Part shown: piece after piece, positions 2,179-63,120 of the stretch
Layout: each line of letters starts with the position of its first letter
Numbering within the stretch: the stretch's first letter is position 1
Virus record (IMG/VR): IMGVR_UViG_3300050014_000823
Location: 235,145 to 299,144 of that record
Length of the DNA: 64,000 bases
Direction: 5' to 3' (one strand)
Program-made: the position numbers and the translations under genes
The notes under the pieces: generated by a model
The model's database searches: none
Told to the model about the DNA's origin: nothing
Seen by the model: the letters and a program-made list of their open reading frames with translations, nothing else

Positions 2179-2261
2179 AGTACTTATAATTATTTCATAT
2201 AAATACTATGTTTTGTTAGAAAATAATTATTTTGGGAGTATCGTAGATGTGTATTTGAAAT

Positions 2262-3041
2262 TTATTTTAAATCTTGTAGTGTATAGCCACCAATTCCACC
2301 AGTTTTACACCTATTTAATGGTATCCAACCCTCAGAAACATATTTATTTAATGTTTCACGTTCTAATTTAATCGCATTTTCAACTGAAACATATTCAGTT
2401 AATTGTTTTCTTATTGGTACTAAACCTGTCATTTTCATGTGAATTGTGACACTATCCCTTTCATCAGAATTTCTAATGTATTGTCTTTTAACTATATTAT
2501 ATGTTAATCCAACATATACGTGATTGTCTGAAAACTCATATGCGTATATACATCTTTTATATTTACTACCCACAGGAATCATGTGTTGACAAATATCATC
2601 AAGCCAACCACTTTTCAACGAAATAGTATATACGTGTGGTGAGAATTTACAAAATTCGGTTTTTGTCTTATATTCCAATGCTCTATTTCGGCAATTTTCA
2701 ACATTATTCCAATGTCCATTCGGCAATTTTTTAAATTTCATATGCCGACAAACATTTTCAAGCCACCCATTGTGTTTTGCTGATTCATATGCTTTTTTAT
2801 CTCCTTGTTGAAATTCTATTCTATGTTGATATTTTAACGCAACAGTGCGACATTTTTCCTCAGTCCACTTAAATGTATCTTCATACGGCTTTTTCATGTG
2901 TTTACATGCAATATCAAGCTGTCCACCTTTTCTCAATATTTCGTATGCTCTCGAAGATATTTCTCTGAAATCACGTCTATTCGAAAATTTAAGTGCTTCG
3001 TCAAAACACATTTTTTCAGTCCACTTATTGTATTTTTTCAT
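2262..3041 (-). CDS. Putative homing endonuclease: three N-terminal repeats plus C-terminal GIY-YIG-like domain
   Basis: CIYAYEFSDNHVYVGLT is GIY-YIG-like. Repeats KWTEKMCFDEALKF / KWTEEKCRTVALKY / HWNNVENCRNRALEY, each followed by G(Q/W)L(D/E)xxCxHM. Confidence 0.65.
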   Translation of the reverse strand: MKKYNKWTEKMCFDEALKFSNRRDFREISSRAYEILRKGGQLDIACKHMKKPYEDTFKWTEEKCRTVALKYQHRIEFQQGDKKAYESAKHNGWLENVCRHMKFKKLPNGHWNNVENCRNRALEYKTKTEFCKFSPHVYTISLKSGWLDDICQHMIPVGSKYKRCIYAYEFSDNHVYVGLTYNIVKRQYIRNSDERDSVTIHMKMTGLVPIRKQLTEYVSVENAIKLERETLNKYVSEGWIPLNRCKTGGIGGYTLQDLK

Positions 3042-3095
3042 AATAAAAAACCGTTAATATAAATACTAACGGTTTACATAAATTTTAAATTATAT

Positions 3096-3737
3096 TTATA
3101 ATATTGTAACTAAATATCTTTTAAGTAAAGTAAAATTAGGGAGAATTTTATAATATGTCAGGTACGTATCACCGCTTAAATCTTCGTGAGATTTAATTGC
3201 CCTATTACATAAACCCAATTTTATTTCATCTATACTAATCCGAAAAAAACCATACATATTGAGATTCACACCCCAAATACATTTTTGTTTTGAAATGGCT
3301 GTTCCTAACACATATAACATTTCGTCTTTGTAATTATAAAGCATGTCTATTTCTTTCGGCAAAACATCCATTAAACCCTGTACATCAACGATTTGAAAGA
3401 ATATTGGGTCTAAATTTACGTATAGGTATTTTGGACTGAAATAAAATTGTGGTACGGCTGCGATAAAACTTTCAATGCCTCTGACGTGCGATTGTTTGCT
3501 TTCTTCGAAGCTGCATTCCCAATAAAGTTCATTGCTAACTATGCGTTTTTTCAGAATATCCGCATTCTGAATTATCTGATTGTTGGGGTTTGAAGCCTTC
3601 ATGAACGACCATCCAACGTATAGTGTAGGAAGTTTGTCGAGACTGTCATACTCTTGTGGTCCTTTATAGTAGTTAATATAACTGACTTCGGTATGATTTA
3701 CCAGTTCTTTTTCATAAATAATGTTACCTATTTTCAT
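3096..3737 (-). CDS. Hypothetical protein
   Basis: 213-aa ORF overlapping the end of hldD; no motif recognised. Confidence 0.65.
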   Translation of the reverse strand: MKIGNIIYEKELVNHTEVSYINYYKGPQEYDSLDKLPTLYVGWSFMKASNPNNQIIQNADILKKRIVSNELYWECSFEESKQSHVRGIESFIAAVPQFYFSPKYLYVNLDPIFFQIVDVQGLMDVLPKEIDMLYNYKDEMLYVLGTAISKQKCIWGVNLNMYGFFRISIDEIKLGLCNRAIKSHEDLSGDTYLTYYKILPNFTLLKRYLVTIL

Positions 3738-4641
3738 TTTTTAGCTTATTTACGTATTTCAAAACACCATCTTCTAACTCATGAAAAGGCTTTTTATAGC
3801 CAGCAACCCTCAACTTATTCATCTTAGCCTCAGTAAAATACTGATACTTGTCTCTGATTTTAATTGGGGTGTCAATATAATTAATAGTTCCGGGATTACC
3901 AAGACTTTTAAAAACTGCTTTCGCCAAGTCATTAAAAGTACGTGCTTTTCCTGTTCCGACATTATAAATACCCGAAAGTGGTTTTTCTGTTGCCATAAAT
4001 ATGCAAACGTCAACAATATCATCCACATATACAAAATCACGTAGCTGTTCACCGTCTTTGTAGTCTGGACGATGTGACTTAAATAATTGAATTTTTGCAG
4101 GACCTGAACAAAACTCAATTTGGTGATATAAATGTAAAACAACAGAAGCCATTTTACCTTTATCGGCTTCTCCGTAGCCGTAAACATTAAAAAATTTTAG
4201 TCCGTACCAATAAGGTGGTTGTTTTTCCTGGACTTCTGCCCAAACATCGAACTGTTGCTTTGACCAACCGTAGGGATTAAGTGGTTGTAACTTAATGATA
4301 TCCTTCTCGTCATTAAAACCTAATTCTCCGTCACCATAGGTTGCTGCACTTGAAGCATAAACCAAAGGGATTTGGTATTCTGCGCAGATATTCCAGATAA
4401 ATATACTTGCGCCAACATTATATTCGTCAAAAAGATTTCTGTCCATAACAGTAGTATCGGTAATAGCACCTAAGTGATAAATAACATCTATATCTTTGGC
4501 GTGAATTAAAAGCCATTCATATATCGACTGCAGACTTTCGGTACGGGTATCAAGTACCACAACACCAATTGCTCCACGTCTTTGCAATTCTGCAACGAGA
4601 TTCTGACCAATAAAACCTAAACCACCTGTTACTACTATCAT
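3724..4641 (-). CDS. hldD: ADP-L-glycero-D-manno-heptose 6-epimerase (extended SDR)
   Basis: VTGGLGFIG Rossmann motif, YASSAATYG, PLNPYGWSK (YxxxK), FFNVYGYGEADKGKMASV, GEQLRDFVYVDD. Confidence 0.9.
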   Translation of the reverse strand: MIVVTGGLGFIGQNLVAELQRRGAIGVVVLDTRTESLQSIYEWLLIHAKDIDVIYHLGAITDTTVMDRNLFDEYNVGASIFIWNICAEYQIPLVYASSAATYGDGELGFNDEKDIIKLQPLNPYGWSKQQFDVWAEVQEKQPPYWYGLKFFNVYGYGEADKGKMASVVLHLYHQIEFCSGPAKIQLFKSHRPDYKDGEQLRDFVYVDDIVDVCIFMATEKPLSGIYNVGTGKARTFNDLAKAVFKSLGNPGTINYIDTPIKIRDKYQYFTEAKMNKLRVAGYKKPFHELEDGVLKYVNKLKNENR

Positions 4642-5066
4642 AAATTTTTTATTTTCTCAATAATATTTGTGCTTGACCTTTTATCTGTTGGGTAAAAAAC
4701 CACACCAAACCTTGAATTTTCACTGCCGATTACCTCTTTATTTCTATATTGGTCACCAACAACCATATAATCAATATCTAACTTATCGACTAAGTTTCTC
4801 AACTCATCATCTGTGTCAAAGATAAATACTTGATGAACCATTCGCAAATTTCGCATTATTGTTATTCTTGTGTTAATGTCATTAATGGGTCGTTTATCAC
4901 CCTTTAACCTCTTAACACGCTCATCTGTATCAAGTCCAACATATAGCTTATTTTCCGCATCGAGAACTGGATATACATCACCGGGTTGATAGTTCTTTGC
5001 ATACCAAAGTAAGTCTATGTGTCCCGTATGTAAGATGTCAAAGCACCCGTTTACCCAGATATTCAT
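4638..5066 (-). CDS. Heptose-1-phosphate nucleotidyltransferase (HldE/RfaE domain II, cytidylyltransferase fold)
   Basis: NGCFDILHTGH (HxGH), VGLDTDERVKRLKGDKRPIN, VVGDQY. Confidence 0.85.
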   Translation of the reverse strand: MNIWVNGCFDILHTGHIDLLWYAKNYQPGDVYPVLDAENKLYVGLDTDERVKRLKGDKRPINDINTRITIMRNLRMVHQVFIFDTDDELRNLVDKLDIDYMVVGDQYRNKEVIGSENSRFGVVFYPTDKRSSTNIIEKIKNL

Positions 5067-15676: not shown

Positions 15677-15707
15677 CAAATATAAACAATAAAAAAGTCA
15701 ATGTCAA
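15677..15707 (-). promoter_or_regulatory. Bacteroidota-type host sigma promoter (TTG-N20-TATATTTG) upstream of KilA-N and the sugar operon
   Basis: Minus strand TATATTTG (15684-15677) matches TAnnTTTG; TTG lies 20 nt upstream (15707-15705). Confidence 0.55.
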
Positions 15708-19634: not shown

Positions 19635-19996
19635 TTATTCTTTTTTAAATAAATACTTGCAATTTAATTTATTTGAATTATCTTTACATTGCCAAATTCT
19701 ATACAAACCTGGCGCACGGGTCGAACCTTATATCTATCGTAAAATTATTGGGTTGAAATGTTAAAACATAAATTACAAGGCGATTTAATTTGTTTCTTTT
19801 GTCAAAAAGAAATAAATATAGTATCCCGAATTTACCACAGGTTTTTTGAAAGTCTGAAAGAATTTCGAACAAATCTTTGTAATTTCGTGTTTGATTCGGA
19901 GAAGCGAACAAGCGTTTGAGTTTTCACGAAAAACGTGGCGAAGTTACAACTTTTTTTCGAGATTATTACTATGTTTTTAAAAATATTTGAAAAATT

Positions 19997-23124: not shown

Positions 23125-23167
23125 TTGTAATAGTTATTATAGATATAAATACAAAAGACCGAGATTT

Positions 23168-24279: not shown

Positions 24280-24417
24280 AATTATAAAATTTTATATTTT
24301 ATTATTGTTTTCAATAAATACGTAGAAAAAAATTTTCGACATAAATTCAAGATTTTTTATTAAGACTCGTATAAGTGGGTATTGAAGTAAAACATTAGAT
24401 AATTTAACATAAATTTT

Positions 24418-28374: not shown

Positions 28375-29130
28375 ATGAAAGAGAAAGAGTTAGAATGTGC
28401 TCCGTATTTTGCAGAAAGGGAAGAGAAAGCAGTACTCGATTATATTAATTCAAATTCCGCACAGGAAAAGAATAAAATATACAACGAAATCCTGCTCGAA
28501 CCCTTCCGCAAGATGATTCAATCCATACTTCGTAGGTATCCGATTCATATCGGAAACTACGATATGGAAGAAGTCGAATCTAATGCTTTGACACACCTTA
28601 TAGAACATATGGTGAAGTTTAATCCCGACAAGATTACCAAGTCCGGAGTGAAAACCAAAGCATTTAGTTATTGCCAGACGATTATCAGAAACTACTACAA
28701 AGACCACAGTAAAAAAAGTTACACTGAGAAAAAAATCAACTTGAGTTTTGACGACTATGTTGATGAGATTAATGAAAATATCGAATACACCTATGAAATG
28801 GAAGTCGATACACACAATCAACTCGATAAACTTATTAAAACTGTGATAGATAAAATAGAGGATAAAATCAATAATGACCCTCTAATGAAGAAGAATGAGG
28901 TAATTGTCGGTGATGCTATCGCCAACGTATTAAAAAATTGGCAGGTGTTATTTCAAGAAGACACTCCAGATGGCAAATACAATAAGAGAGTAACAAATAA
29001 GTTTGCAAAAAACAAAATATTACTTTTTTTAAAAGAGCAAACTGGTCTGTCAACCAAAGAGATAAGAATTGCAATTAAACCTTTCAAGGATATTTACTTC
29101 CTGGAAAAAATTGACTATCTCGATGACTAA
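28375..29130 (+). CDS. gp55: Phage late-transcription sigma factor (T4 gp55-like)
   Basis: YFAEREEKAV..., region-2-like EEVESNALTHLIEHMVKFNPDK and KAFSYCQTIIRNYY; no recognisable region 4. Confidence 0.65.
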   Translation: MKEKELECAPYFAEREEKAVLDYINSNSAQEKNKIYNEILLEPFRKMIQSILRRYPIHIGNYDMEEVESNALTHLIEHMVKFNPDKITKSGVKTKAFSYCQTIIRNYYKDHSKKSYTEKKINLSFDDYVDEINENIEYTYEMEVDTHNQLDKLIKTVIDKIEDKINNDPLMKKNEVIVGDAIANVLKNWQVLFQEDTPDGKYNKRVTNKFAKNKILLFLKEQTGLSTKEIRIAIKPFKDIYFLEKIDYLDD

Positions 29131-29147: not shown

Positions 29148-29155
29148 GTATTTAT
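29148..29155 (+). promoter_or_regulatory. Putative late promoter GTATTTAT
   Basis: Motif 20 nt upstream of ATG 29176; one of 22 gene-oriented copies. Confidence 0.65.
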
Positions 29156-35114: not shown

Positions 35115-35180
35115 GTTTTTATCTGTTTAATTAAATAATGCTTATTTTTCTAATAAATACTTACGTATTTGAAAATAAAA

Positions 35181-35696: not shown

Positions 35697-35746
35697 TTTA
35701 TAAAAAATTATAATATTATTTTCTCATAAATACTATATAAAAAAGA

Positions 35747-38743: not shown

Positions 38744-38751
38744 ATAAATAC
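38744..38751 (-). promoter_or_regulatory. Putative late promoter GTATTTAT for the sheath operon
   Basis: ATAAATAC on the plus strand upstream of sheath ATG 38682. Confidence 0.65.
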
Positions 38752-38948: not shown

Positions 38949-38956
38949 GTATTTAT
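38949..38956 (+). promoter_or_regulatory. Putative late promoter GTATTTAT
   Basis: 21 nt upstream of ATG 38978. Confidence 0.65.
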
Positions 38957-42046: not shown

Positions 42047-42054
42047 GTATTTAT
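42047..42054 (+). promoter_or_regulatory. Putative late promoter GTATTTAT
   Basis: Only 5 nt before ATG 42060, implying a near-leaderless transcript if functional. Confidence 0.55.
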
Positions 42055-44798: not shown

Positions 44799-44825
44799 TT
44801 AATTACAGTTTTTATATAAATACTC

Positions 44826-45521: not shown

Positions 45522-45836
45522 AGAATATCAGCAAGAAGCAAATTTTCTCAAAATATCTTTGGATAGGTTTCTTGAGAAATATCCCGACTTGCCTGCAGAC
45601 GTAATTCTTTTAATGAGAGTTACTTACGATGGTTTAGGACTTGGTGAAGCAGGTGAAGTACAGGGTAAAATCAAAAAGATTATTCGGGATGATGGTGGAA
45701 AAATAACACCTGAACATATTGAAGCAATTAAGGGTACGTGAACAGTTCGGTTAAATCTACAAAAATCTATTAAAACCTATGAAAATCTATGGACGAAATA
45801 ATTTTAATAAAAACTGATATTTTTAATTAATATATA

Positions 45837-45844
45837 CTATTTAT
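45837..45844 (+). promoter_or_regulatory. Late-promoter-type motif CTATTTAT inside the IS left end, upstream of tnpB
   Basis: 33 nt before tnpB ATG 45878. Confidence 0.5.
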
Positions 45845-45877
45845 AAAAGAGTATTAAAATTACCCAATTAAATTAAA

Positions 45878-47215
45878 ATGTTGAAAGCAATTAAAATTAG
45901 ACTTTATCCGAACAAAACTCAAAGTAGTTATATAAATCGTCTATGTGGTTCATATAGAAAGGTATTTAATATGTGTTTGGAAAAAAAGATAAGTGCTTAT
46001 AACAATGACAAGACAAGTCTGGGATTAAAGGAATTAGGAAATTATTTTCATCAGGACTTAATTAAAAAAGAAGAATTTTTATATCTCAATGAGCACAACA
46101 CCAAAGTATTAAAACAAACAATCATAAATTTACTTGATAGTTATAAAAGATTTTTTGTAAATGGTAATGGTTTCCCCAAATATAAATCAAAACATGATAA
46201 CAATCAGTCAGCGAGATTTCCGCTGGAAGCAATATCAAAATTAAATAGTTATTCTGATAACAAGATAACATTAGGCAGACCATTAAAAAATATTAGTTTT
46301 GAATGTTCTAACAGAGATAAAAATTATTTAACAAATCACAAAGATAAAATCAAGTCAGCAACCATAAGTAGAACAAAATCCGATAAATACTTTTTATCTG
46401 TTCTTATTGATAATATAATTGAAAAACAAATACCAGAACCAACTAATGATATTTTAGGTATTGATATTGGTATAAAAGATTTTATGGTTTGTTCTGATGG
46501 TCAAGTGTTTAATAACTTGAAACTTAAACGTAATAATGAAAAAACATTAATTAAATTACAAAGACAATTAAGTAAAAAACAATTAGTTGGGACTGGTGAA
46601 TATCGGTTAAATAAATATGGTAATAAGGTTGAAATAAATAAACCTTCAAACAATAGATATAAAGCAAGAGTAAGACTTGTAAAATTTCAAGAAAAATTAA
46701 ATAATATAAAAATAAATTACATACATAACATTACAACTCAATTAGTTCGTGAGAACCAAACGATAGTTATTGAGAATTTAAATGTTAAAGGTATGTTAAA
46801 AAACCATTGTTTGGCAAAATCAATTCAAGATTTAAGTATCAACGAGGCATTCAGACAGTTAAAATACAAATCTGAATGGTATGGAAGAGATTTGATTATA
46901 ATAGACAGATGGTTTCCTTCGAGTAAATTATGTAATGTTTGTGGTTATAAGTATAAGAATTTATCATTAAAAGAAAGACATTGGACTTGTCCAGACTGTG
47001 GGACACAACATGATAGAGATTATAATGCGGCAACAAATATTATGAAAGAAGGAAAGAGATTGATAGGGACACGTTATCCCGAATTTACGCTTGTGGACTA
47101 TCCAACTATGGATGACAGACTCAGTAATGAGGTACTAAAAAGTAGTGATAGGTTGAGACAAGAAGAAAAAAGTACAAATAGTGAACGAAGTGAACTTCGT
47201 ACTAAGTTTTTGTAG
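45878..47215 (+). CDS. tnpB: TnpB RNA-guided endonuclease
   Basis: KAIKIRLYPNKTQ N-terminal HTH; RuvC GIDIG (D), VIENL (E), HDRDYNAA (D); zinc finger CNVC...CPDC. Confidence 0.95.
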   Translation: MLKAIKIRLYPNKTQSSYINRLCGSYRKVFNMCLEKKISAYNNDKTSLGLKELGNYFHQDLIKKEEFLYLNEHNTKVLKQTIINLLDSYKRFFVNGNGFPKYKSKHDNNQSARFPLEAISKLNSYSDNKITLGRPLKNISFECSNRDKNYLTNHKDKIKSATISRTKSDKYFLSVLIDNIIEKQIPEPTNDILGIDIGIKDFMVCSDGQVFNNLKLKRNNEKTLIKLQRQLSKKQLVGTGEYRLNKYGNKVEINKPSNNRYKARVRLVKFQEKLNNIKINYIHNITTQLVRENQTIVIENLNVKGMLKNHCLAKSIQDLSINEAFRQLKYKSEWYGRDLIIIDRWFPSSKLCNVCGYKYKNLSLKERHWTCPDCGTQHDRDYNAATNIMKEGKRLIGTRYPEFTLVDYPTMDDRLSNEVLKSSDRLRQEEKSTNSERSELRTKFL

Positions 47216-47245
47216 ATTTTTTTGAACGGTGAATTATCTGATATA
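47060..47245 (+). ncRNA. Putative TnpB omega/reRNA (scaffold overlapping the tnpB 3' end, guide from the right flank)
   Basis: Inferred from established TnpB architecture; boundaries are approximate and were not folded computationally. Confidence 0.55.
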
Positions 47246-47415: not shown

Positions 47416-47423
47416 GTATTTAT
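47416..47423 (+). promoter_or_regulatory. Putative late promoter GTATTTAT upstream of the HNH gene
   Basis: 15 nt before ATG 47439; supports 47439 rather than 47352 as the start. Confidence 0.6.
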
Positions 47424-50843: not shown

Positions 50844-51026
50844 TTACCATTTCTCCATGAGAATTGATAATGCATCTAATGCTGCAAGTTGTGCTACAAC
50901 GCTTGCGTCACTATTAGTTACTAAAGTCACACCTGGAGTACTGTTAAAACCACTACCTGCTAAACCTGCGCCAATTCTTGCCCATAGTCTGTAGGTATTT
51001 TGTGTTAAAGGTGATGTTGCTGTCAT
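50844..51026 (-). CDS. Small late protein
   Basis: 60 aa, late motif at 51060-51067; shares a Y-x-LWA-x-IG motif with its neighbour. Confidence 0.65.
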   Translation of the reverse strand: MTATSPLTQNTYRLWARIGAGLAGSGFNSTPGVTLVTNSDASVVAQLAALDALSILMEKW

Positions 51027-51095
51027 TTCGTTTTAGTTTTTAAATAATATTATTTACATATAAATACTCAAAATTTCCCTAAAATCGAGATATAA

Positions 51096-51530
51096 TTAGG
51101 GTTGTTCATGAATAACTGCTTCTGCAGCCAAGTATGCCAATTGTCTTGCTATACTTTCATCTGTAGGTGTAACGCCAGGTATATAACCGATTTTTGCCCA
51201 TAAATCGTAATCTTCGGTTGACAAATCTACTGCCAAACCTGCGGTAAAGCTAACTTGATTACCATATGTGGTTACACCACCTGTGGTTGCATATGCTCTG
51301 ACATAATATGTGTTATTTGCAAGCAATCCAGTTAATGAACTTACAAAAGGTGCTAAAGAAGTACCATTGGTTGTTTTACTGTTTGCTATGGTTGGGTTCG
51401 GTGAAGTATTCCATACTACACCCTTTGCTGTAAGAGTCACACCTGTGACTGTTGAAGTGACTGTACCACCACCAGTTGCGGTTGCTGTGGTTATCGAACT
51501 TATTGCGGAAGTAGTAACTATAAGTGCCAT
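51096..51530 (-). CDS. Fibronectin type III-like domain protein (possible virion decoration)
   Basis: TAKGVVWNTSPNPTI...FVSSLTGLLANNTYYVRAYAT...YGNQVSFT; late motif at 51564-51571. Confidence 0.75.
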   Translation of the reverse strand: MALIVTTSAISSITTATATGGGTVTSTVTGVTLTAKGVVWNTSPNPTIANSKTTNGTSLAPFVSSLTGLLANNTYYVRAYATTGGVTTYGNQVSFTAGLAVDLSTEDYDLWAKIGYIPGVTPTDESIARQLAYLAAEAVIHEQP

Positions 51531-51587
51531 AATTTTTTCTATATTTAGTTTAAGTTATTTTATATAAATACTTTGAAATATCTGGAT

Positions 51588-52148: not shown

Positions 52149-53267
52149 TTAAATAGCTATAATTGGGAACATTGGTGGTTGATATCCACGTTCTCTGTTG
52201 ACATTCTCTGCAATATCTGCACGAATCTTAGTCATGTTTTCCTGGCTTAAGTATGCCAATTGTTCCATTATAATTTTTTCTGTTGCTTCTTTTAGTTCTT
52301 TACCTTCGTCAAGTAAATGTCTGTAGTCCATAGTTAACTGCTTGTCAGTTACACCAAGTTCACCACTGTAGAAACCTCTCATACCACCGATAACAATTTT
52401 CACTTTAGCCAACAATAGATTTCTTATTTGCTGATGTGCAACGTCATTCATCTTTGACCACTCAAGTATTTTGGCAGGTGGGTCTGAAGGTAATTTAATA
52501 ACATCGTTATTTTCCTCCAAACATTTATCTCTGTCGGCAGGATTCGTATCGTAATACCAATACCAAACTTTCCTACCTGCATAGTGTGTTCCCCACTGAC
52601 CAGCAATTTCATGACGGTCACCGGGAACTGGGTATAAATGCAAAATCTTTTCGCCTGATGCCAAACCTGTAATACGATAGGTTAATATTGACTGTAAAAC
52701 TCTTTGCTTCATTCTACGGTCCTGTGCAGCAAGTAATGTTGAAAAGGTCGGTTGTACATATGATGCAGGACGACCTAAATATGACCATCCAACCATGCCG
52801 GGTGACCAAGCATTCATTGCGAATGGGTCAGCAAGTCCACCGTCAATTTCTGGTGGTGTTTCCCAAAGCACTTCATTAACTTCTCTACCCGCAGGTATGA
52901 TATAGTGCTGAGTATGTCCCGAAGTTACAATAAAATCACGTTTTAGTTCCCATCCTTCTGCTGCAGGAGCATTAGTACCCAAACCTACTTGTTTAGAATA
53001 GGCATAGGTAAAACTCTCCATGTAATGGTTTGATTTATTGGTATATGCTGAGAGAAAGTCGCCTGTCTCTTTATCCATACCTTCCAATGAAATCCACTGC
53101 TGTTGAATTAACCAGCCATTTACAAGTGCGGAATAGTCCTCAACGACCATTTCAAGAAACGAAATCATCTGTTCGTCATCAAGTTCAAATGGTCTTTTTG
53201 GGTGACCCATTTCGTGTTTTATCTTAAGAAATAAATTATTTCTATCAACTGTTGTTATTAATCCCAT
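52149..53267 (-). CDS. Neck/head-tail adaptor protein (gp13-like)
   Basis: LFLKIKHEMGHPKRPFELDDEQMISFLE, IRNLLLAKVKIVIG..R, LTMDYRHLLDEGKELKE. Confidence 0.75.
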   Translation of the reverse strand: MGLITTVDRNNLFLKIKHEMGHPKRPFELDDEQMISFLEMVVEDYSALVNGWLIQQQWISLEGMDKETGDFLSAYTNKSNHYMESFTYAYSKQVGLGTNAPAAEGWELKRDFIVTSGHTQHYIIPAGREVNEVLWETPPEIDGGLADPFAMNAWSPGMVGWSYLGRPASYVQPTFSTLLAAQDRRMKQRVLQSILTYRITGLASGEKILHLYPVPGDRHEIAGQWGTHYAGRKVWYWYYDTNPADRDKCLEENNDVIKLPSDPPAKILEWSKMNDVAHQQIRNLLLAKVKIVIGGMRGFYSGELGVTDKQLTMDYRHLLDEGKELKEATEKIIMEQLAYLSQENMTKIRADIAENVNRERGYQPPMFPIIAI

Positions 53268-53318
53268 AATTACATATATTTGTGGTCTGTTTCACATAAA
53301 TACTTTAATAGAACTATT

Positions 53319-56473: not shown

Positions 56474-56513
56474 CAGTTTAAATTTCTTATTTCCTAATTT
56501 ATTTTTTAACCAC

Positions 56514-56972
56514 TTATTTATCTCTGTAATACAGAGAACTTTTCCAAGTGATTTTAATATTAATTGTATCCAAGTCACTATCATATCTGTATACTACTGT
56601 TGGCGTTGTTCCAATTATTACTGCAAATCCGTTTGGTGATTGTTCACGTGTAATTTCCAAACTATCTATAAATATTTTTGCACCGCTTATCCAAGTTTTA
56701 ACCGCTTGACCATTGTACTTTGAATTGCTTTGTAACACCAATTCATATCTGTATTTGGGTAAGACATTAACCTGTTTCTGAATAGTAGTCTGATTTATAG
56801 ACATTACATTCAGTTGTTTTGTAACATATGATGAAATACTTATTTTATTTGCTTGTGATGTTTCTCTATCCCAAGTTCCTAAATCTTCTACCTTACTTTT
56901 TTTGACATAATCTTGTGCATTTAATGCAATAAATCCAAACAATAGTACGGCAATAATTAAAATTTTTTTCAT
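56514..56972 (-). CDS. Secreted protein with signal peptide I
   Basis: MKKILIIAVLLFGFIALNA-Q; Gln at +1 is typical of Bacteroidota; late motif at 56991-56998. Confidence 0.75.
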   Translation of the reverse strand: MKKILIIAVLLFGFIALNAQDYVKKSKVEDLGTWDRETSQANKISISSYVTKQLNVMSINQTTIQKQVNVLPKYRYELVLQSNSKYNGQAVKTWISGAKIFIDSLEITREQSPNGFAVIIGTTPTVVYRYDSDLDTINIKITWKSSLYYRDK

Positions 56973-57011
56973 TATATAAACATTACGACTATAAATACTT
57001 TTATAAAAAGA

Positions 57012-57037
57012 AAAAGGGTGTCAATTGACACCCTTTT
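57012..57037 (-). terminator. Intrinsic terminator after the major capsid gene
   Basis: Palindrome AAAAGGGTGTCAA/TTGACACCCTTTT with a U-run on the minus strand. Confidence 0.8.
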
Positions 57038-57057
57038 CTATATTGGTTGTTTTAAGA

Positions 57058-58731
57058 TTACCTTAAGTCACCGATTCCGAAGGTTGTTAAACCATCGCAG
57101 TAGATTCTACCGTAGTAACGGTTAAGTACCATTTTCTTTGCATAACGAGTCATGATACCACGGATTGGTGTGAAATCAAATGGGTTATACATTACAGGGG
57201 TTAACTGCATTGGTACGTAAGGAGCGTAGATGTAACCTGTTTCCAAGATACTTGTTCCTTTATGTCCGATAAGCACTGTGTTAGCAGGTGAATAAGGGTC
57301 ACGATATACAAGATAACGTCCGCTAAGTGTACCGATTTTCTCAATACCCATGTTGTACTTGTCCTGTTCTGGAGAAGCGTTAGATACATGGAAATATTCA
57401 AGGTCATCGAATACTGCAGATACCTCAGGAGATACTACAATCCATGATGCGCCACCACGAAGGGTTGCTTTGTGAATCTGTGCAGAAATCTGGTTAATTT
57501 TCGTAACCAAAGTCTGGTTCCAGTCCTTCTGTGTACCCATGTAAGCAGTTGTCTGTCTACGGATACCGTTGTAGTCCCATCTTGATGTCCAAGCAGCACC
57601 ACGTCTCAAATCACGAAGGATTTCACGGTCAATTTCAGCAGCCATTTGCTCAGAAAGCAATGCTGTTAATTCAGCTTCAGCGTCAATGTTTTGGAAAGCA
57701 CTAACGTCCTGTGCAAGTTCTGGAGTCCACTGTGCACGCATTTTTCTTGTCTCAACTGATACAGTTACCTGGTCAAGTTGGAAAGTTACTTCAGCCATAC
57801 GGCTATCTTCTTCCATATCAGAGTAAACTCTGTATTCGAATGAGAAAGCAGGTGTGCCTGTTGATGCGCTTAATGCCTGGTAACCATCAGTTCCAGCGTA
57901 GGTTAAGTCAACAAGTAAGGTCATGTTACCAAGTTTGTCAACCATTGCCTGTCCGTATTTCTGAACTTTTACGTTGAAAGGAATAGATGTACCTGCAAGA
58001 AGACTTTCACTTACGAAAGGAGCAGGAGCAGTAAAGTTAGCACTTGATTTGATTTTCAAACCAGCTAAGAAAGATTCAGTGTCCATTGGAACGCCCGTAG
58101 GTCCAACTAACTTACCTTCGAAGGTTGTACTGAAACCACCAACTACTACTGTAAGATATTTTGTTCCAGGTGCGTAAGGGAATGGAAGTGAAGTAGCACC
58201 AGTTACAACGGTGATTTCACCTTTGCTTCTGTCAAATAATGATGCACCTTCTTCAGCGTATTCAGTTGCATAGAAAGCATCGTATAATGAACGGCTTTCG
58301 AACTGAGTTCTTGCTGATAATACTGTGGTTGCTGCGTTAGCATATGCACCATCAGGTGAAGTGTTAGCGAACTGAGCTGCGTTAACTTGAACTCTCTCAG
58401 ATGCTTTAGGGTTGATGTAGTACAATTTACCGATAGGTAAGTTAAGTGCTTGTACAGACACGATGTCGTTTGCTAAAAGTTTAGCGAACACTCTACGGAT
58501 AACCGGGAATGCAACGGTTTCAAACTGACCACTGTTATATGATTCAGTTGACTCGTTAATCATGTGTGATAACTGGTTTTCGAAAAGCTGTGCGCAGTTC
58601 TCTTTTACGTTACCTTCAAGACCTTCAAGAAGTCCGATTTTTTCCCAACGATTCGTTGTTATTTCTCTTTGTTCACGGAGTTGTTTCAAACCAATGTTGC
58701 CAACTTCCGCACTTTCTAATAAAAATCCCAT
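57058..58731 (-). CDS. gp23: Major capsid protein (T4 gp23-like)
   Basis: RWEKIGLLEGL, AQLFENQ, FPVIRRVF, VSVQALNLPIGKLYY, RKMRAQWTPELAQD, EIDREIL, YAPYVP, GIMTRYA. Confidence 0.95.
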   Translation of the reverse strand: MGFLLESAEVGNIGLKQLREQREITTNRWEKIGLLEGLEGNVKENCAQLFENQLSHMINESTESYNSGQFETVAFPVIRRVFAKLLANDIVSVQALNLPIGKLYYINPKASERVQVNAAQFANTSPDGAYANAATTVLSARTQFESRSLYDAFYATEYAEEGASLFDRSKGEITVVTGATSLPFPYAPGTKYLTVVVGGFSTTFEGKLVGPTGVPMDTESFLAGLKIKSSANFTAPAPFVSESLLAGTSIPFNVKVQKYGQAMVDKLGNMTLLVDLTYAGTDGYQALSASTGTPAFSFEYRVYSDMEEDSRMAEVTFQLDQVTVSVETRKMRAQWTPELAQDVSAFQNIDAEAELTALLSEQMAAEIDREILRDLRRGAAWTSRWDYNGIRRQTTAYMGTQKDWNQTLVTKINQISAQIHKATLRGGASWIVVSPEVSAVFDDLEYFHVSNASPEQDKYNMGIEKIGTLSGRYLVYRDPYSPANTVLIGHKGTSILETGYIYAPYVPMQLTPVMYNPFDFTPIRGIMTRYAKKMVLNRYYGRIYCDGLTTFGIGDLR

Positions 58732-58751
58732 TTTGTATGATTTTTTTTATG

Positions 58752-60359
58752 TTATTGAATTATTTTTTTGTCTCTTCTTTCGACATACTCAATCAGTTTT
58801 TTCATTTTATTGATGTGTTTGTCGTCTTTGTAAGCGGTTACCTCATCAAGTTGTTGCTTAGAAGAAGGCTGTATAGAGACACTTGCCTTTGCTTCTACGC
58901 TCTCAGTTAGAGTTTTCTTACCTTCCTTCATTTCTGTAAGGAAGTTTTTGTACACCTTCTGTGATGAAGCGATACTATCAACCTTTTTAAATTCGTTGAT
59001 AATCTTTATTTTATCATCTTGTGTCAAGGCGAGTTCTTCGTTAACCAACAGATTGTTGACGTGAGCCAAGTTGGTGTTGAATACTGCCATTTCTTTCAAT
59101 TGATTGCGATACTTGTCAAGTGCAATTTTGTAATTTTCAAGTAATTTGGTAACACTCTGTTTGTACTCCTTAGTTTCATTCAACTTTTTAGTGAGAATTT
59201 TGTTCTCTTTGATTAAACCACCTAATTTCTTAGCTGATTCATCCTGTTGACGGAATCTTCCGTGAGTTCCTTCGTGGTCACCTAATTTACCGGGTGTGAT
59301 TGTACCTGCAGAATAAGAAATTTGCATAGTTTCATCAACTGGTGCTTCTGAACCTGCTGAACCCAATACGTCTTGTACGTCTTGGTCGGTAATAGTTGGC
59401 TCTTCGTCAATCATTGGCTGAGTAGGTCCACCCGGATGAATGCGGTTTGCACCTTGTCCACCGTTGTTTTTTTGTTCGCCTAATTCGTCAATCATTGGGT
59501 GAGTAGGTCCACCAGCGTTGACTTGGTTTGCACCTTGTCCACCGTTGTTTTTCTGCTCTCCAAGACCACCGAGATTATTAATCATTTCATCAAGTTGTTC
59601 TCTCATTTTTACAAGTTGGTCCACCGGACTGCCTGTAGTTGTTGCAGCTTGTACTCCGTTTAATTCCTCACCAAGTCCCTGCATCTGAGAAATTTCTTCC
59701 TCGATTTGTTCCATTGTGAGAACGTCATCGTTTCCACCTGCATTACCCAAAGCATTGTCCACACTCTGTGTATCAAGTTCTGTTATGTCGAATTCTTCTG
59801 TTAAATTTGGCATTGGTTTACCTGAAGTTGGTCCTTTGATTTTTTCTTTAAAAGCAACACCCTTTTCGAGTTCACCTTTACCCTGATTTGGAGTTTTAGC
59901 TTCCACATCAGCTACGAAATCTTTTTCACGTTCTTCTTCAAGCATGTCCTTTCCTTTAGCTTTCGCTTTTTCTTTGAAAGGTTCACCCTTACCAACAGTA
60001 TCAGTGATTTTTACATCTTCTGCTACTTTCTGAATTCCTTTTGGTTTTTCACCGAAAGGCTTGCTGCTACCAGCTTCTTCTTTTACGACCTTTTTGGTCT
60101 CTTTTTCTTGATTCTTCATATCAGATTCTTTGTTTGATTCAGTTTCATCTGATTCCTCAGATTCTTTGTCATTATCCAATATTTTATAGGACTCTTTTAC
60201 TGACTTTTTATTTTTAGTTATTTCTTCTTTTAATAAGTTGTTAAATTCCTTTGGGAATTCTTCTGCCAATCTTTTTTTAGCATTAGCATCTGCAGCTTCT
60301 TGGATTGAGTTATAATCCACTAAGGCTTCTTTGAGAATAGATTTGCTTTCGTTTGCCAT
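58752..60359 (-). CDS. Prohead scaffold/core protein
   Basis: Acidic/charged coiled coil between protease and capsid; MANESKSILKEAL, C-terminal EMAVFNTNLAHVNNLL; late motif at 60395-60402. Confidence 0.75.
   Translation of the reverse strand: MANESKSILKEALVDYNSIQEAADANAKKRLAEEFPKEFNNLLKEEITKNKKSVKESYKILDNDKESEESDETESNKESDMKNQEKETKKVVKEEAGSSKPFGEKPKGIQKVAEDVKITDTVGKGEPFKEKAKAKGKDMLEEEREKDFVADVEAKTPNQGKGELEKGVAFKEKIKGPTSGKPMPNLTEEFDITELDTQSVDNALGNAGGNDDVLTMEQIEEEISQMQGLGEELNGVQAATTTGSPVDQLVKMREQLDEMINNLGGLGEQKNNGGQGANQVNAGGPTHPMIDELGEQKNNGGQGANRIHPGGPTQPMIDEEPTITDQDVQDVLGSAGSEAPVDETMQISYSAGTITPGKLGDHEGTHGRFRQQDESAKKLGGLIKENKILTKKLNETKEYKQSVTKLLENYKIALDKYRNQLKEMAVFNTNLAHVNNLLVNEELALTQDDKIKIINEFKKVDSIASSQKVYKNFLTEMKEGKKTLTESVEAKASVSIQPSSKQQLDEVTAYKDDKHINKMKKLIEYVERRDKKIIQ
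59403..59564 (-). repeat. 81-bp (27-aa) tandem duplication in the scaffold gene
   Basis: LGEQKNNGGQGANQVNAGGPTHPMIDE / LGEQKNNGGQGANRIHPGGPTQPMIDE. Confidence 0.85.
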
Positions 60360-60494
60360 ATCTTTATTGTCGTGACTAATACTATAATTTTTATATAAAT
60401 ACGTAATTTTTATCAAAAAGTATTATTTTTAATGATTTCGCCTTTAATTTTCTTGCTTATCAGAAAAATTATACTATATTATGCGCCCAAATAT

Positions 60495-62414
60495 TTATAA
60501 TAAAAATTTGTCTATTGCCGTAATTATCTTATCGTCACCTTCTTTAAGATAAATACCATTTTTATTTACGTAGGTTTCTCCAAAGCTAAGTTCGCCATTT
60601 TTGCCAGGGAATAGAAATGCTCCGGGAGTACTTGGTGTTGCAACTAAGTCAAAACCAATTAATTCGAAGTCATTTTGTACAAGGTTCTCACCATGTAATT
60701 CCTTAAGCGTTCCGACACCACGGCTGGAAATACCTAATCTGATTTTATTTTGTAAGTAGAGAATTACCTTATCGCCAACAACTGAAACCACACCATACTT
60801 AATAAAGCCGGGTGATACAATTATTTTTAATTCTCCGAATAAAACATTTTCTTGCTGACCTTTACCCCACCACATTTTTGTAATCATGTGTGAGATATTC
60901 TGAAGTGATATTATGCTTGAATTACCTGTCCAATGTGATTTGCCGTTTACTTTAACTAAAAAGTTGCCATTTTTAACTCTAACGCAAGCAATGTCACCAT
61001 CAAAATCAATCTCATTAACACTAATACATCTTTTATCTAAATAAATGTTTTTTCTTTTTGATATATTTAAATTATATTGTAAATGAGAGTTTTCTTCTTT
61101 AATCAACCTTCTTTCATTAACATCTTCGTTCATATGTTCAATTGTTCCATCGGATAAAACAATCTCTTTTTTTATTATTACACAATCTATTAAATATCTG
61201 TCTTTAGGTTGATATGTAGTAATATTACCGTTTCCACCAATTTTAATCAGCACTTCGTGTAAATCATTAATTAATTGTTTTGATATTGAAAAAACCGATT
61301 CTTTATTCGACCAATTTTTATGCTTTGACTTAACCGATTTACCATCGCCAATTTGAAACCAATCAAAAAATATTTTCAATAAATTTGATGATGCCTGTTT
61401 TAATTCAACAGGAATATATTTATTATATGAATATCCTAATGGATATAAATAATTATATAATCTTGCGTCTGCTATATGATATTGACATTTTCCATTATCA
61501 TGTTCATCAACCCAATATTTAAAAGGTAATTTATTTAATAATTCTACAATAATTTTCTTTTTTTCCGTATTTTTTTGTGTTATAACAACATCATATCCTT
61601 TCAATTTATATTGATTGGACTTTGTACCGCCACAATGCCCTTCAGCCAAATAAATACCTATAAATGCAAACCAATCCTCAGACTTAATATTGATTGGTCG
61701 TGTATATTTTTCAATTAAATCATGTTTTGTATTAAAACTAAGAATATTTGTGTCAACGCCATTTAATGTGAAATATTCATTATATTGACCAACCCATTCA
61801 CCTGTTTTTAATAATTTATATTTACCTGATGAGAAAATATTGTTTTTATTATTAAAAATATCTTCAGCAAAAAAATAATTTCTATCACCTTTCGAGTTTT
61901 CAAGTAAAAATCTGTGATTACCAGTCACAGTTAAATCAATATTTTGACCAAAAAATTTATACATCTTACCCTTATAATCCAAATAGATTTTTTTATCAAT
62001 TTTTTGAATTTCAATTTGATTTGTTTCGGTATTTAATGTTAATATTTCTTCATCTTCTGAAATGTCCTTGAACCATTTCCAACCATTTTTAGTACAAATC
62101 ATTGATTCAGAAGCATTTACGCAGTCTGGGTGGTCGGCTTCGGAAACCGCACTATTAGTATCAACTAACTTTTGATACTCCATAACTTGTGGTAGAAGAA
62201 CCTCTTTAGGATAAATCCTACCGTTCTTATTTTTAACACCCCACTTCTGTAAAATACAGTTTATTAAAACTGGCTCATTTGGCTTAAGCACAAATGCTTC
62301 GTTAACGTATTTGGGATTTAAATCAGAGTCTAAATAACCAGCATCGTGCTCGATTAAAATTCCAAAACCCACATCACCAGCTTCCAGTATCCTGCTTAAT
62401 TGTTTCTTTAGCAT
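60495..62414 (-). CDS. gp21: Prohead core protease (T4 gp21-like) containing an intein
   Basis: ILQKWGVKNKNGRIYP, SEADHPD...SSIISLQNISH, LGISSRGVG, FDLVATPSTPGA. Confidence 0.92.
   Translation of the reverse strand: MLKKQLSRILEAGDVGFGILIEHDAGYLDSDLNPKYVNEAFVLKPNEPVLINCILQKWGVKNKNGRIYPKEVLLPQVMEYQKLVDTNSAVSEADHPDCVNASESMICTKNGWKWFKDISEDEEILTLNTETNQIEIQKIDKKIYLDYKGKMYKFFGQNIDLTVTGNHRFLLENSKGDRNYFFAEDIFNNKNNIFSSGKYKLLKTGEWVGQYNEYFTLNGVDTNILSFNTKHDLIEKYTRPINIKSEDWFAFIGIYLAEGHCGGTKSNQYKLKGYDVVITQKNTEKKKIIVELLNKLPFKYWVDEHDNGKCQYHIADARLYNYLYPLGYSYNKYIPVELKQASSNLLKIFFDWFQIGDGKSVKSKHKNWSNKESVFSISKQLINDLHEVLIKIGGNGNITTYQPKDRYLIDCVIIKKEIVLSDGTIEHMNEDVNERRLIKEENSHLQYNLNISKRKNIYLDKRCISVNEIDFDGDIACVRVKNGNFLVKVNGKSHWTGNSSIISLQNISHMITKMWWGKGQQENVLFGELKIIVSPGFIKYGVVSVVGDKVILYLQNKIRLGISSRGVGTLKELHGENLVQNDFELIGFDLVATPSTPGAFLFPGKNGELSFGETYVNKNGIYLKEGDDKIITAIDKFLL
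60921..62123 (-). mobile_element. 401-aa intein with LAGLIDADG endonuclease
   Basis: Starts CVNASESMICTKNGWK, contains VTGNHRF (block B) and FIGIYLAEGH (LAGLIDADG), ends LVKVNGKSHWTGN; +1 residue is Ser. Confidence 0.92.
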
Positions 62415-62446
62415 AACAAATTCTTTACTATAAATAGTTTGCAATA

Positions 62447-62599
62447 TTAATTTAACTCAACACTAACCTTTTGTTGAGGTTCTTTTACCGTTTTAACATC
62501 CTCAACATTAATATTTTCAATAAAAATGCGAGTCTCTGTCTCGATTAAAATTTTTTTAAGAGTTGCGTTAACCTCTTTTAGTTTTTCTAATTTGGTCAT
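62447..62599 (-). CDS. Small hypothetical protein
   Basis: Not in the ORF track; manual translation MTKLEKLKEVNATLKK... 50 aa, filling the gap in the operon. Confidence 0.45.
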   Translation of the reverse strand: MTKLEKLKEVNATLKKILIETETRIFIENINVEDVKTVKEPQQKVSVELN

Positions 62600-62608
62600 T
62601 GGATTGAA

Positions 62609-63025
62609 TTATGATTCTGGAGTTATTTTTTCAACCTTTTCACGAATTTCGTCTAACTTCAATAAGATTTTTTCACTCTCAACTCTTCCAATTTTTTCGT
62701 TTAAATCCAATAACATAGATACACCATTTAATACATGTAGGGTTTCTTTTTCACTTTCCATCCACTGACGACCTCTTTCTTCCTCTTTTTTAAGCATTTC
62801 CACTCTGATTCTTTCGAGTGTATCCGAATGGTCCTTTCTGATTGCATCAACTTTTGCAGTATGTTGCTGTTGCATGAGTTTCATTTCAGCAGTTTTCTTT
62901 TTTAGTGACCTCATTGCAATGATGATGGATATCGTGTATGTGACGACTGAAACACCAATCATCGCAATTATAATATATTGATGCAAAAGTGTGGCATCTG
63001 TTCCGGCTATTTGCATTAAAATCAT
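62609..63025 (-). CDS. Single-pass membrane protein with coiled coil (holin-like?)
   Basis: YIIIAMIGVSVVTYTISIIIAM transmembrane segment then a charged helix; CTATTTAT motif at 63041-63048. Confidence 0.6.
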   Translation of the reverse strand: MILMQIAGTDATLLHQYIIIAMIGVSVVTYTISIIIAMRSLKKKTAEMKLMQQQHTAKVDAIRKDHSDTLERIRVEMLKKEEERGRQWMESEKETLHVLNGVSMLLDLNEKIGRVESEKILLKLDEIREKVEKITPES

Positions 63026-63120
63026 AGTTTTTGTTTTATAATAAATAGTCTTGAAACTCTGATAAGATTTTATTATCTTTATATTTTTTCAATTTCTGTA
63101 TTTATAGTAAAATCAGAATA

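What the first reader, a model, noticed from the sequence alone, without database searches (positions are those of the whole stretch)
2199..63105. Late promoter looks like the reverse complement of the T4 late promoter
(G/C)TATTTAT sits 5-61 nt upstream of 22 start codons, each time in the gene's orientation. Plus-strand cores start at 29149, 38950, 42048, 45838, 47417 and 63099. Minus-strand cores (ATAAATA on plus) start at 2199, 3059, 19649, 23145, 24314, 35153, 35726, 38744, 44816, 51060, 51564, 53296, 56991, 60395, 62430 and 63041. Nineteen copies have G and three have C at position 1. Most targets are structural genes. T4 gp55 reads TATAAATA on the coding strand; here the coding strand carries its reverse complement while a gp55-like sigma is encoded at 28375. 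This suggests a sigma with re-wired -10 specificity. My scan was by eye and not exhaustive.
Basis: partly seen in the sequence, partly recalled or inferred. Interest (0 to 1): 0.7.

Follow-up and report, generated by a model that had tools for sequence, protein, structure and literature searches.

The report
T4-type late promoter variant, Bacteroidota phage
A short DNA word, GTATTTATA, sits just upstream of the virion genes of this 299-kb uncultured phage and its relatives; it is most likely the late-gene promoter, a two-base variant of the classic phage T4 late promoter read by a distant relative of the T4 late sigma factor.

Summary
All 22 listed sites exist. The window holds 31 copies of [G/C]TATTTAT against 11.7 expected. 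23 of 31 sense copies have an ORF-opening ATG 5-61 nt downstream, against an 18% background (p=1.5e-11); antisense copies sit at background. Genome-wide (299 kb) there are 117 copies, with spacing peaking at 13-18 nt. The consensus is a-GTATTTAT-A-nn-AAA, with no -35 element.

The motif is kept upstream of orthologous genes in 21/21 to 49/53 related metagenomic loci while the flanks diverge. It recurs as (C/A)TATTTATA before terminase, portal and sheath genes of the cultured Flavobacterium phage immuto.

"Reverse complement of T4" is literally true but is not the simplest reading. The T4 box is nearly palindromic, so in the same orientation TATTTATA differs from TATAAATA only at two central bases (AA to TT).

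The ORF at 28375 is a divergent sigma. Its N-terminal half matches T4 gp55 (Z 9.9; profile-profile E 3e-5), and it carries an extra C-terminal domain. It co-occurs with the motif across its family.

No transcription start could be mapped. The genome also encodes a second gp55-like ORF and two ECF sigmas, so the sigma assignment is inferred.

Verdict: new variant of a known kind.

The parts
2199..2206 (-). GTATTTAT box, 20 nt upstream of ATG of 60-aa ORF 1996-2178
3059..3066 (-). GTATTTAT box, 17 nt upstream of ORF 2262-3041 (259 aa, phrog_20046, unknown function)
19649..19656 (-). GTATTTAT box, 14 nt upstream of 1106-aa ORF 16314-19634
23145..23152 (-). GTATTTAT box directly after a terminator-like hairpin, 20 nt upstream of 846-aa ORF 20584-23124
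   Evidence: kept in 3/3 orthologous upstream regions
24314..24321 (-). GTATTTAT box, 34 nt upstream of the baseplate hub gene 23365-24279
   Evidence: kept in 35/35 orthologous upstream regions
28375..29130 (+). Gene for a 251-aa divergent sigma factor (P0001). The N-terminal half is gp55/sigma-region-2-like; there is an extra C-terminal helical domain. It has no GTATTTAT box of its own.
   Evidence: 0/40 orthologous upstream regions carry the box
29148..29155 (+). GTATTTAT box, 20 nt upstream of the 129-aa ORF 29176-29565 that follows the sigma gene
   Evidence: The block GTATTTATATGTACTAAAAC is kept in 49/53 orthologous regions while flanks diverge. CTATTTATA stands at the same place in relatives with 30-34% sigma identity.
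35153..35160 (-). GTATTTAT box, 38 nt upstream of the tail tube gene 34623-35114
   Evidence: 37/37 orthologous regions
35726..35733 (-). GTATTTAT box after a terminator-like hairpin, 29 nt upstream of ORF 35181-35696
38744..38751 (-). GTATTTAT box, 61 nt upstream of the tail sheath gene 35791-38682
   Evidence: 21/21 orthologous regions
38949..38956 (+). GTATTTAT box, 21 nt upstream of ATG 38978 (724-aa ORF), divergent partner of the sheath promoter
42047..42054 (+). GTATTTAT box only 5 nt from ATG 42060 (383-aa ORF). This is too close for a T4-like start site unless the mRNA is leaderless or the true start codon lies further down.
44816..44823 (-). GTATTTAT box, 17 nt upstream of ORF 44034-44798
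45837..45844 (+). CTATTTAT, 33 nt upstream of a TnpB-like transposase gene 45878-47215. It lies inside a repeated mobile element (second copy at genome 144282-145735, 83% identical), so membership of the class is doubtful.
47416..47423 (+). GTATTTAT box, 15 nt upstream of ATG 47439 (209-aa ORF)
51060..51067 (-). GTATTTAT box, 33 nt upstream of 60-aa ORF 50844-51026
51564..51571 (-). GTATTTAT box, 33 nt upstream of ORF 51096-51530
53296..53303 (-). GTATTTAT box, 28 nt upstream of ORF 52149-53267 (372 aa)
56991..56998 (-). GTATTTAT box after a terminator-like hairpin, 18 nt upstream of ORF 56514-56972
60395..60402 (-). GTATTTAT box, 35 nt upstream of ATG 60359 (535-aa ORF). The major capsid gene 57058-58731 follows after a 20-nt gap with no box of its own.
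62430..62437 (-). CTATTTAT box, 15 nt upstream of the head maturation protease gene 60495-62414
63041..63048 (-). CTATTTAT box, 15 nt upstream of ORF 62609-63025
63098..63105 (+). GTATTTAT box, 15 nt upstream of ORF 63121-end, divergent partner of 63041

Best explanation
[G/C]TATTTAT[A] followed by nn-AAA is the late-gene promoter of this jumbo T4-like phage, whose host is most likely a member of the Bacteroidota. It is a single -10-like box without a -35 element.

Read in the same orientation as the T4 late box, it is TAT-TT-ATA against TAT-AA-ATA. The A residues at the positions T4 gp55 flips into deep pockets (-12, -8) are kept. Only the two central bases (-10, -9) differ.

A phage-encoded gp55-like sigma on the host RNA polymerase core reads it. 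The most likely candidate is the 251-aa protein encoded at 28375-29130.

Transcription would start in or just after the conserved A-run about 5-6 nt downstream of the box. That gives very short leaders (about 8-12 nt for the commonest spacing), consistent with the absence of Shine-Dalgarno sequences upstream of this genome's genes.

Shown: the enrichment, the strand and distance rule, conservation across relatives, the lack of a -35 element, the association with virion genes, and the sigma nature of the 28375 protein.

Inferred: that the box is a promoter rather than an RNA element, the start site, the late timing, and which sigma reads it.
For: Motif statistics.

No information above 0.3 bit anywhere from -50 to -1. 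A at +8 and AAA at +11 to +13 are conserved. T4 late promoters likewise have an AT-rich segment after the box and no -35 element (PMC2988020).

Several boxes follow terminator-like hairpins or sit back to back in divergent intergenic regions.

Footprinting in 80 related loci: the box is kept in 35/35, 49/53, 37/37 and 21/21 unique orthologous upstream regions. It is absent upstream of the PhoH gene, the sigma gene, the ORFs at 25557, 26297 and 27521 (the last a possible glycosyltransferase) and the exonuclease gene.

The cultured Flavobacterium phage immuto (capsid protein 33% identical) has (C/A)TATTTATA 11-25 nt upstream of terminase, portal, sheath and other genes. 9 of 10 sense copies lie within 45 nt of annotated starts.

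Sigma evidence:
- 27/80 family members hit Sigma70_r2.
- The family profile hits SigA region 2 at E=0.011, and T4 gp55 (7d7c) weakly at E=0.33.
- AlphaFold model pLDDT 90.7.
- VIA-align Z=9.9 to T4 gp55 chain 7d7c_F over 115 residues, and Z=9.0 to sigmaE region 2 bound to its -10 element.
- hhalign against a gp55 family alignment gives E=2.9e-5, probability 74%.
- The alignment pairs T4 Y10, W23 and Y97 with Y11 (invariant), Y23 and Y99 (at least 90% conserved). T4 N13 and H95, which line the -9 pocket, are replaced by E and F/Y (PMC7892883).

Co-occurrence: the only sigma-like gene found in immuto is a member of this family, gp118 (E=7e-36). It is also that genome's only, weak, gp55-model hit. 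Relatives with only 30-34% sigma identity carry CTATTTATA right after the sigma gene.

The two ECF sigmas of the genome are accounted for by a separate two-element promoter class, TGTAAC-N16-CGTATAAT.

Host-type TTG-N19-TAnnTTTG promoters and the lack of SD sequences point to a Bacteroidota host. No phage RNA polymerase was detected.
Against: There are no transcription start data. Two read-laying runs on peat metatranscriptomes gave only short, diverged contigs of relatives.

The 28375 protein does not hit the gp55 family model directly, and the profile-profile probability is only 74%.

A second ORF, 114 aa at genome 98359-98703 outside the window, matches the gp55 model better (E=1.8e-9; hhalign probability 95% over 43 columns). 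It could be the late sigma.

No gp33 or gp45 homologue was found, so a T4-like clamp-activated mechanism is not supported.

The tight distance to the start codon would also fit an element acting on the mRNA.

The box at 42047 is only 5 nt from its ATG, and the one at 45837 belongs to a mobile element.

Only 21 of 58 promoter positions needed at divergent junctions are explained by the two phage motif classes, and that count rests on crude gene calls.

Most target genes have no annotation, so 'late' rests on the few that have one.
Confidence: 0.62

Rival explanations
1. The box is the late promoter, but it is read by the other gp55-like protein of the genome (114 aa, genome 98359-98703, minus strand, outside the window). 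The 28375 protein would then serve another gene class.
For: The 114-aa ORF matches the T4 gp55 family model better than P0001 does: phrog_234 E=1.8e-9, hhalign probability 95%. It has the motif NAFAYVVQ aligned to T4 NPHAYITQ. A sigma-region-2-only protein would fit a promoter without a -35 element.
Against: Its match covers only 43-48 residues, and the ORF is much shorter than gp55. No homologue was found in Flavobacterium phage immuto, which uses the same box and has a member of the 28375 family. The box follows the 28375-family gene even in relatives with 30-34% identity.
Confidence: 0.15
2. The box acts on the RNA, not the DNA. It would be a conserved 5' leader element for translation initiation, processing or stability of late messages in a host that does not use Shine-Dalgarno pairing.
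For: The distance to the start codon is tight, peaking at 13-18 nt. SD sequences are absent. A conserved A-run lies between the box and the ATG.
Against: Boxes stand directly after terminator-like hairpins and back to back in divergent gaps, where promoters must lie. Distances range from 5 to 77 nt. Most genes inside operons lack the box. The box matches the T4 late box at 6 of 8 positions, and a gp55-like sigma is encoded alongside. No other promoter-like motif was found for the virion genes.
Confidence: 0.06
3. The box is read by the host primary sigma, possibly with a phage co-factor, as a variant of the Bacteroidota -7 element TAnnTTTG.
For: TATTTAT agrees with TAnnTTT at 4 of 5 defined positions. 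Host-type TTG-N19-TAnnTTTG promoters do occur in the genome.
Against: No TTG element is conserved at -33. The final G of the host element is absent. Single-base variants towards the host consensus lose the association. The phage carries four sigma-like genes of its own.
Confidence: 0.07
4. Chance or compositional artefact of an AT-rich genome.
For: GC is 35%. Nine window copies inside ORFs look like background.
Against: Zero of 100 shuffles reach the observed count. The strand and distance tests give p=1.5e-11 in the window and 2e-44 in the genome. The box is conserved across relatives.
Confidence: 0.01

Closest known systems
Phage T4 late promoter (TATAAATA at -13 to -6) with gp55, gp33 and the gp45 sliding clamp
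   Same: A single 8-bp A/T-only box with no -35 element and an A/T-rich stretch behind it. It occurs on both strands in front of virion genes. A phage sigma with a region-2-like domain is present. 6 of 8 box positions are identical in the same orientation, including the A at -12 and -8 that gp55 flips out (PMC2988020, PMC7892883).
   Different: The two central bases are TT instead of AA. A G (or C) precedes the box. The T4 word itself is at background here. The candidate sigma is 251 aa with an extra C-terminal domain and does not hit the gp55 family model. No gp33 or gp45 homologue was found. The host polymerase is of the Bacteroidota type.
Variant late boxes of other T4-related phages (KVP40, 44RR and S-PM2 near-identical; Aeh1 with a/gC at -13/-12)
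   Same: They show that the late box drifts between T4-related lineages while the system is kept (PMC2988020).
   Different: The variants reported there change the upstream edge of the box, not its centre. None of the papers searched reports TATTTATA.
ECF sigma promoters (AAC at -35, CGT at -10)
   Same: This genome also uses them: TGTAAC-N16-CGTATAAT, about 45 copies, with two phage ECF sigmas.
   Different: That is a separate two-element class. It is confined almost entirely to genome 0-120 kb, in front of small non-virion genes, and is unrelated to the box studied here.
Bacteroidota primary-sigma promoters (TTG at -33, TAnnTTTG at -7)
   Same: The centre of the -10-like element is T-rich. 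Such promoters occur in this genome.
   Different: The box has no -33 element and no terminal G, and its sequence requirement is strict and different.

Membership tests
T4-type late promoter | A single A/T-only box near -10 is the only conserved element; there is no -35 element | tested here: met
   In 94 aligned instances no position from -50 to -1 exceeds 0.3 bit
T4-type late promoter | Box sequence TATAAATA on the non-template strand | tested here: not met
   The sense box is TATTTATA (6/8 identical). Sense TATAAATA gives 15/102 near starts, which is background, p=0.56
T4-type late promoter | A/T-rich segment immediately downstream of the box | tested here: met
   A at +8 and AAA at +11 to +13, 0.4-0.75 bit
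T4-type late promoter | Stands in front of late (virion) genes, on either strand | tested here: met
   Sheath, tube, baseplate hub, head protease and the capsid operon carry it. The genes for PhoH, the sigma, the exonuclease and the UvrD-like helicase do not. Most targets are unannotated.
T4-type late promoter | Transcription starts about 6 nt downstream of the box, late in infection | not testable with these tools
   Metatranscriptome contigs were too sparse and too diverged
gp55 late sigma family | Match to the family sequence model (phrog_234) | tested here: not met
   P0001 has no hit. Its immuto homologue hits weakly, E=0.008. hhalign of the two family alignments gives E=2.9e-5, probability 74%.
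gp55 late sigma family | Sigma region 2 homology fold that docks on the beta' coiled-coil | tested here: met
   Z=9.9 to 7d7c_F (gp55) over 115 residues; Z 8-9 to region 2 of sigmaE, RpoS and SigW. Docking itself was not tested.
gp55 late sigma family | Conserved aromatic residues at positions 10 and 23, and the Y97 pocket residue | tested here: met
   hhalign pairs them with Y11 (invariant), Y23 and Y99 (at least 90% conserved). This rests on a weak alignment.
gp55 late sigma family | [quoted passage not shown] | tested here: inconclusive
   P0001 ends in IDYLDD, and some relatives end in [IL]D[ED]G[LYF][LI], but the tail is not conserved across the family
gp55 late sigma family | Works with gp33 and the gp45 clamp | tested here: not met
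   No hit to phrog_254 or phrog_223; tblastn with T4 proteins gives only E>0.1. Very diverged homologues could have been missed.
ECF sigma / ECF promoter | Two-element promoter with AAC at -35 and CGT at -10; sigma with regions 2 and 4 | tested here: not met
   The box has no -35 element. The C-terminal domain of P0001 gives only noise-level region 4 matches, Z 4.5-5.1.

The most novel reading that the evidence does not exclude
The 28375 family (more than 650 clusters at 50% identity, almost all from uncultured phages) could be an unsplit counterpart of the T4 late sigma. A gp55-like region 2 domain would be joined to a C-terminal domain that does the job of gp33 or sigma region 4 on the beta flap, working without a sliding clamp. 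Its -9 pocket would be re-specified (T4 N13/H95 replaced by E and F/Y), so that it reads TT instead of AA at the centre of the box. On this reading the late box of T4-like phages tracks the T-rich -10 grammar of the Bacteroidota polymerase.
Probability: 0.25. Interest if true: 0.7.

Novelty: new variant of a known kind. Interest (0 to 1): 0.55.

Why it matters
This gives a testable promoter-sigma pair for a very large, almost wholly uncultured group of T4-like phages from soil, peat and fresh water that probably infect Bacteroidota. One cultured member, Flavobacterium phage immuto, makes experiments possible.

The box can be used now to call late operons and to correct start codons in these genomes.

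Comparison with T4 offers a natural experiment on how a region 2 domain changes base preference at two positions of a -10-like element while keeping the flipped bases at -12 and -8. It also asks whether late transcription can work without gp33 and the sliding clamp.

The window also illustrates a three-tier promoter layout: host-type, ECF-type and gp55-type.

Tried and rejected
- blastn of 7.9 kb against the phage collection found no match. Pfam and PHROGs on P0001 itself gave nothing useful. BLASTP of P0001 against T4 gp55 found nothing.
- The search for related loci with the diverse alignment failed for lack of a conserved stretch. The single protein worked.
- Both read-laying runs on metatranscriptomes (capsid operon 56500-62480; tube and sheath region 34500-40400) gave only short contigs, mostly 85-95% identical, from relatives. 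None ended at a box, so there is no start-site evidence either way. One contig with adapter sequence ended at 58730, the capsid start codon, but a single contig from a relative was not taken as evidence.
- Searches for gp33, for gp45, and for a multisubunit or T7-like RNA polymerase were negative. The T7-like search rang in no control genome, so it says little.
- The C-terminal domain, modelled alone (pLDDT 86), has no clear structural relative. Region 4 of sigma factors appears only at noise level. There is no similarity to gp33.
- The divergent-junction test explains only 21 of 58 expected promoters and depends on my crude longest-ORF gene calls.
- Literature searches for the word found nothing relevant.
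- Rhodothermus phage RM378 does not share the box. It shows (T)ATTTAA instead, and its annotated sigma does not match the family.

Full report
What the window is. The window is the last 64 kb of a 299,144-bp IMG/VR virus record, 91% complete by CheckV and 35% GC. Near-identical DNA is found in peat metagenomes. The major capsid protein (57058-58731, minus strand) belongs to the T4 gp23 family. Its nearest cultured relatives are Flavobacterium phage vB_FspM_immuto (33% identity) and Rhodothermus phage RM378. Only 22 of 370 ORFs have an SD-like tetramer within 20 nt of the start, no more than random. The genome also carries promoters of the Bacteroidota primary-sigma type, TTG-N19-TAnnTTTG. A Bacteroidota host is therefore likely; this is an inference.

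The observation. All 22 sites are present, with the stated G/C split and distances. The window has 31 copies of [G/C]TATTTAT against 11.65 expected, and none of 100 shuffles reached 31. The nine unlisted copies lie inside ORFs and look like background.
- In the window, 23/31 sense copies have an ATG opening an ORF of at least 60 aa 5-61 nt downstream. Random positions give 18% (p=1.5e-11) and antisense copies 5/31.
- In the whole genome the figure is 81/117 against 13% (p=2e-44). The T4 word TATAAATA in sense orientation is at background, 15/102.
- The distance from the box to the ATG peaks at 13-18 nt.
- Exact GTATTTATA is followed by a start in 46/58 cases. Only G to C at the first base and A to G/T at the ninth are tolerated.
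- Aligned instances give a-GTATTTAT-A-nn-AAA, with nothing conserved upstream and so no -35 element.

Conservation. Eighty loci of related phages were fetched through the sigma gene (67-100% identical).
- The box is kept upstream of the orthologues of the baseplate hub (35/35 unique upstream sequences), the ORF after the sigma gene (49/53), the tail tube (37/37) and the sheath (21/21).
- It is absent upstream of the PhoH gene, the sigma gene, the ORFs at 25557, 26297 and 27521 (the last a possible glycosyltransferase) and the exonuclease gene.
- At the site after the sigma gene, the block GTATTTATATGTACTAAAAC is kept while the sequence to its left is unrelated between loci.
- In the cultured phage immuto, (C/A)TATTTATA stands 11-25 nt upstream of the terminase, portal, sheath and other genes. 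9 of 10 sense copies lie within 45 nt of annotated starts.
- In two metagenomic relatives whose sigma is only 30-34% identical, CTATTTATA again follows the sigma gene, and the gene order glycosyltransferase, sigma, ~125-aa ORF is kept.

Which genes carry the box. In the window the annotated targets are all virion genes: tail sheath, tail tube, baseplate hub, head maturation protease, and the operon that ends in the capsid gene. Recognisable DNA-metabolism genes lack it. Most other targets are unannotated, so 'late' is an inference from the annotated ones. Several boxes follow terminator-like hairpins (23145, 35726, 56991). Two pairs sit back to back in divergent gaps (38744/38949 and 63041/63098).

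Relation to T4. But TATAAATA is nearly its own reverse complement. Written in the same orientation, the two boxes differ only at positions 4 and 5: TAT-AA-ATA against TAT-TT-ATA. In the gp55 open complex, the bases flipped into protein pockets are A-12 (deep pocket, Y97), A-9 (shallow pocket, N13 and H95) and A-8 (deep pocket, T99) (PMC7892883). With the boxes in register, A-12 and A-8 are kept here and -10/-9 change. The simplest reading is an ordinary same-strand box with a changed centre, not an inverted one. T4 late promoters also lack a -35 element and have an A/T-rich stretch behind the box. Related phages show small box variants (PMC2988020).

The sigma at 28375. The 251-aa protein has more than 900 close homologues in metagenomes and 657 clusters at 50% identity.
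- It has no direct Pfam or PHROG match.
- 27 of 80 diverse relatives hit Sigma70_r2. A family profile finds region 2 of SigA (E=0.011), other sigmas and, weakly, gp55.
- The AlphaFold model is confident, pLDDT 90.7. Its best structural matches are all sigma factors: T4 gp55 at Z=9.9 over 115 residues, and sigmaE region 2 on its -10 element at Z=9.0.
- hhalign against a gp55 family alignment gives E=2.9e-5 and probability 74%.
- The alignments pair the T4 residues Y10, W23 and Y97 with Y11 (invariant), Y23 and Y99 (at least 90% conserved). The -9 pocket residues N13 and H95 pair with E and F/Y. This fits a kept -12 contact and a changed -9 contact, but it rests on weak alignments.
- Residues 140-251 form a further helical domain with no clear relative. 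Region 4 of sigma factors appears only at noise level, and there is no similarity to gp33.
- No gp33 or gp45 homologue was found in the genome.

Other sigmas and promoter classes. Outside the window the genome encodes a 114-aa ORF (98359-98703, minus strand) that matches the gp55 model better, though only over 43-48 residues. It also encodes two ECF sigmas with regions 2 and 4. A second intergenic motif, TGTAAC-N16-CGTATAAT, has the ECF layout. It occurs about 45 times, almost only in genome 0-120 kb in front of small genes. That accounts for the ECF sigmas and leaves the single-element box to a gp55-like protein. Immuto, which uses the box, has a member of the 28375 family (gp118, E=7e-36, annotated hypothetical). 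That gene is also its only gp55-model hit. Immuto has no Sigma70_r2 hit and no homologue of the 114-aa ORF. This co-occurrence is why I assign the box to the 28375 family. It is not proof.

What could not be done. No transcription start was mapped. The metatranscriptomes that hold relatives gave only short, diverged contigs. The start in the A-run, the short leaders and the late timing are therefore inferred by analogy with T4.

Verdict. This is a new variant of the T4-type late promoter and sigma system, found across a large and mostly uncultured phage group. It was not reported in the literature I could search.

Noticed in passing
window 41985-42012 (-); about 45 further copies in genome 0-120 kb: A second promoter class with the ECF-sigma layout, TGTAAC-N16-CGTATAAT. 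It sits in front of small non-virion genes. Two phage ECF sigma genes lie outside the window, at genome ~30929-31495 (+) and ~145850-146533 (-). In several cases the ATG lies 6 nt after CGTATAA, so those messages would be leaderless. Many others share the leader GTAACCAAAACA.
   Followed up: partly
window 15677-15707 (-), 34564-34593 (-), 44826-44856 (+); others genome-wide: Promoters of the Bacteroidota primary-sigma type (TTG-N19-TAnnTTTG). Together with the absence of Shine-Dalgarno sequences, they point to a Bacteroidota host and a three-tier transcription programme.
   Followed up: partly
genome 98359-98703 (-), outside the window (locus L002:1471-1815): A 114-aa ORF that matches the T4 gp55 family model (E=1.8e-9) over the region 2 helix. 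It is a second, minimal gp55-like protein of unknown role.
   Followed up: partly
window 60495-62414 (-): The head maturation protease gene (Peptidase_S77, T4 gp21-like) is interrupted by an intein-like insertion. Pfam Intein_splicing matches residues 126-497.
   Followed up: no
window ~45731-47230 (+) and genome 144282-145735: Two copies (83% identical) of a TnpB-like transposase element (phrog_506). Each carries CTATTTATA about 33 nt before the gene, so the mobile element may use or mimic the phage late box.
   Followed up: partly
window 27521-29565; loci L094, L095, L096: The gene order glycosyltransferase-like ORF, sigma, ~125-aa ORF is kept in relatives whose sigma is only 30-34% identical.
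   Followed up: partly
locus L097 (Rhodothermus phage RM378, 105587-129908): RM378, another distant T4-like phage, shows a different T-rich word, (T)ATTTAA, upstream of about half of its genes in this region. Its annotated sigma does not match the 28375 family.
   Followed up: partly
window 58730: One metatranscriptome contig of a relative (run X4) ends with Illumina adapter sequence exactly at the capsid gene's start codon. It is a single observation and was not interpreted.
   Followed up: no
C-termini of the 28375 family (alignment A1): P0001 ends in IDYLDD, and several relatives end in [IL]D[ED]G[LYF][LI]. This hydrophobic-acidic tail recalls the clamp-binding epitope of T4 gp55, but it is not conserved across the family.
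   Followed up: partly
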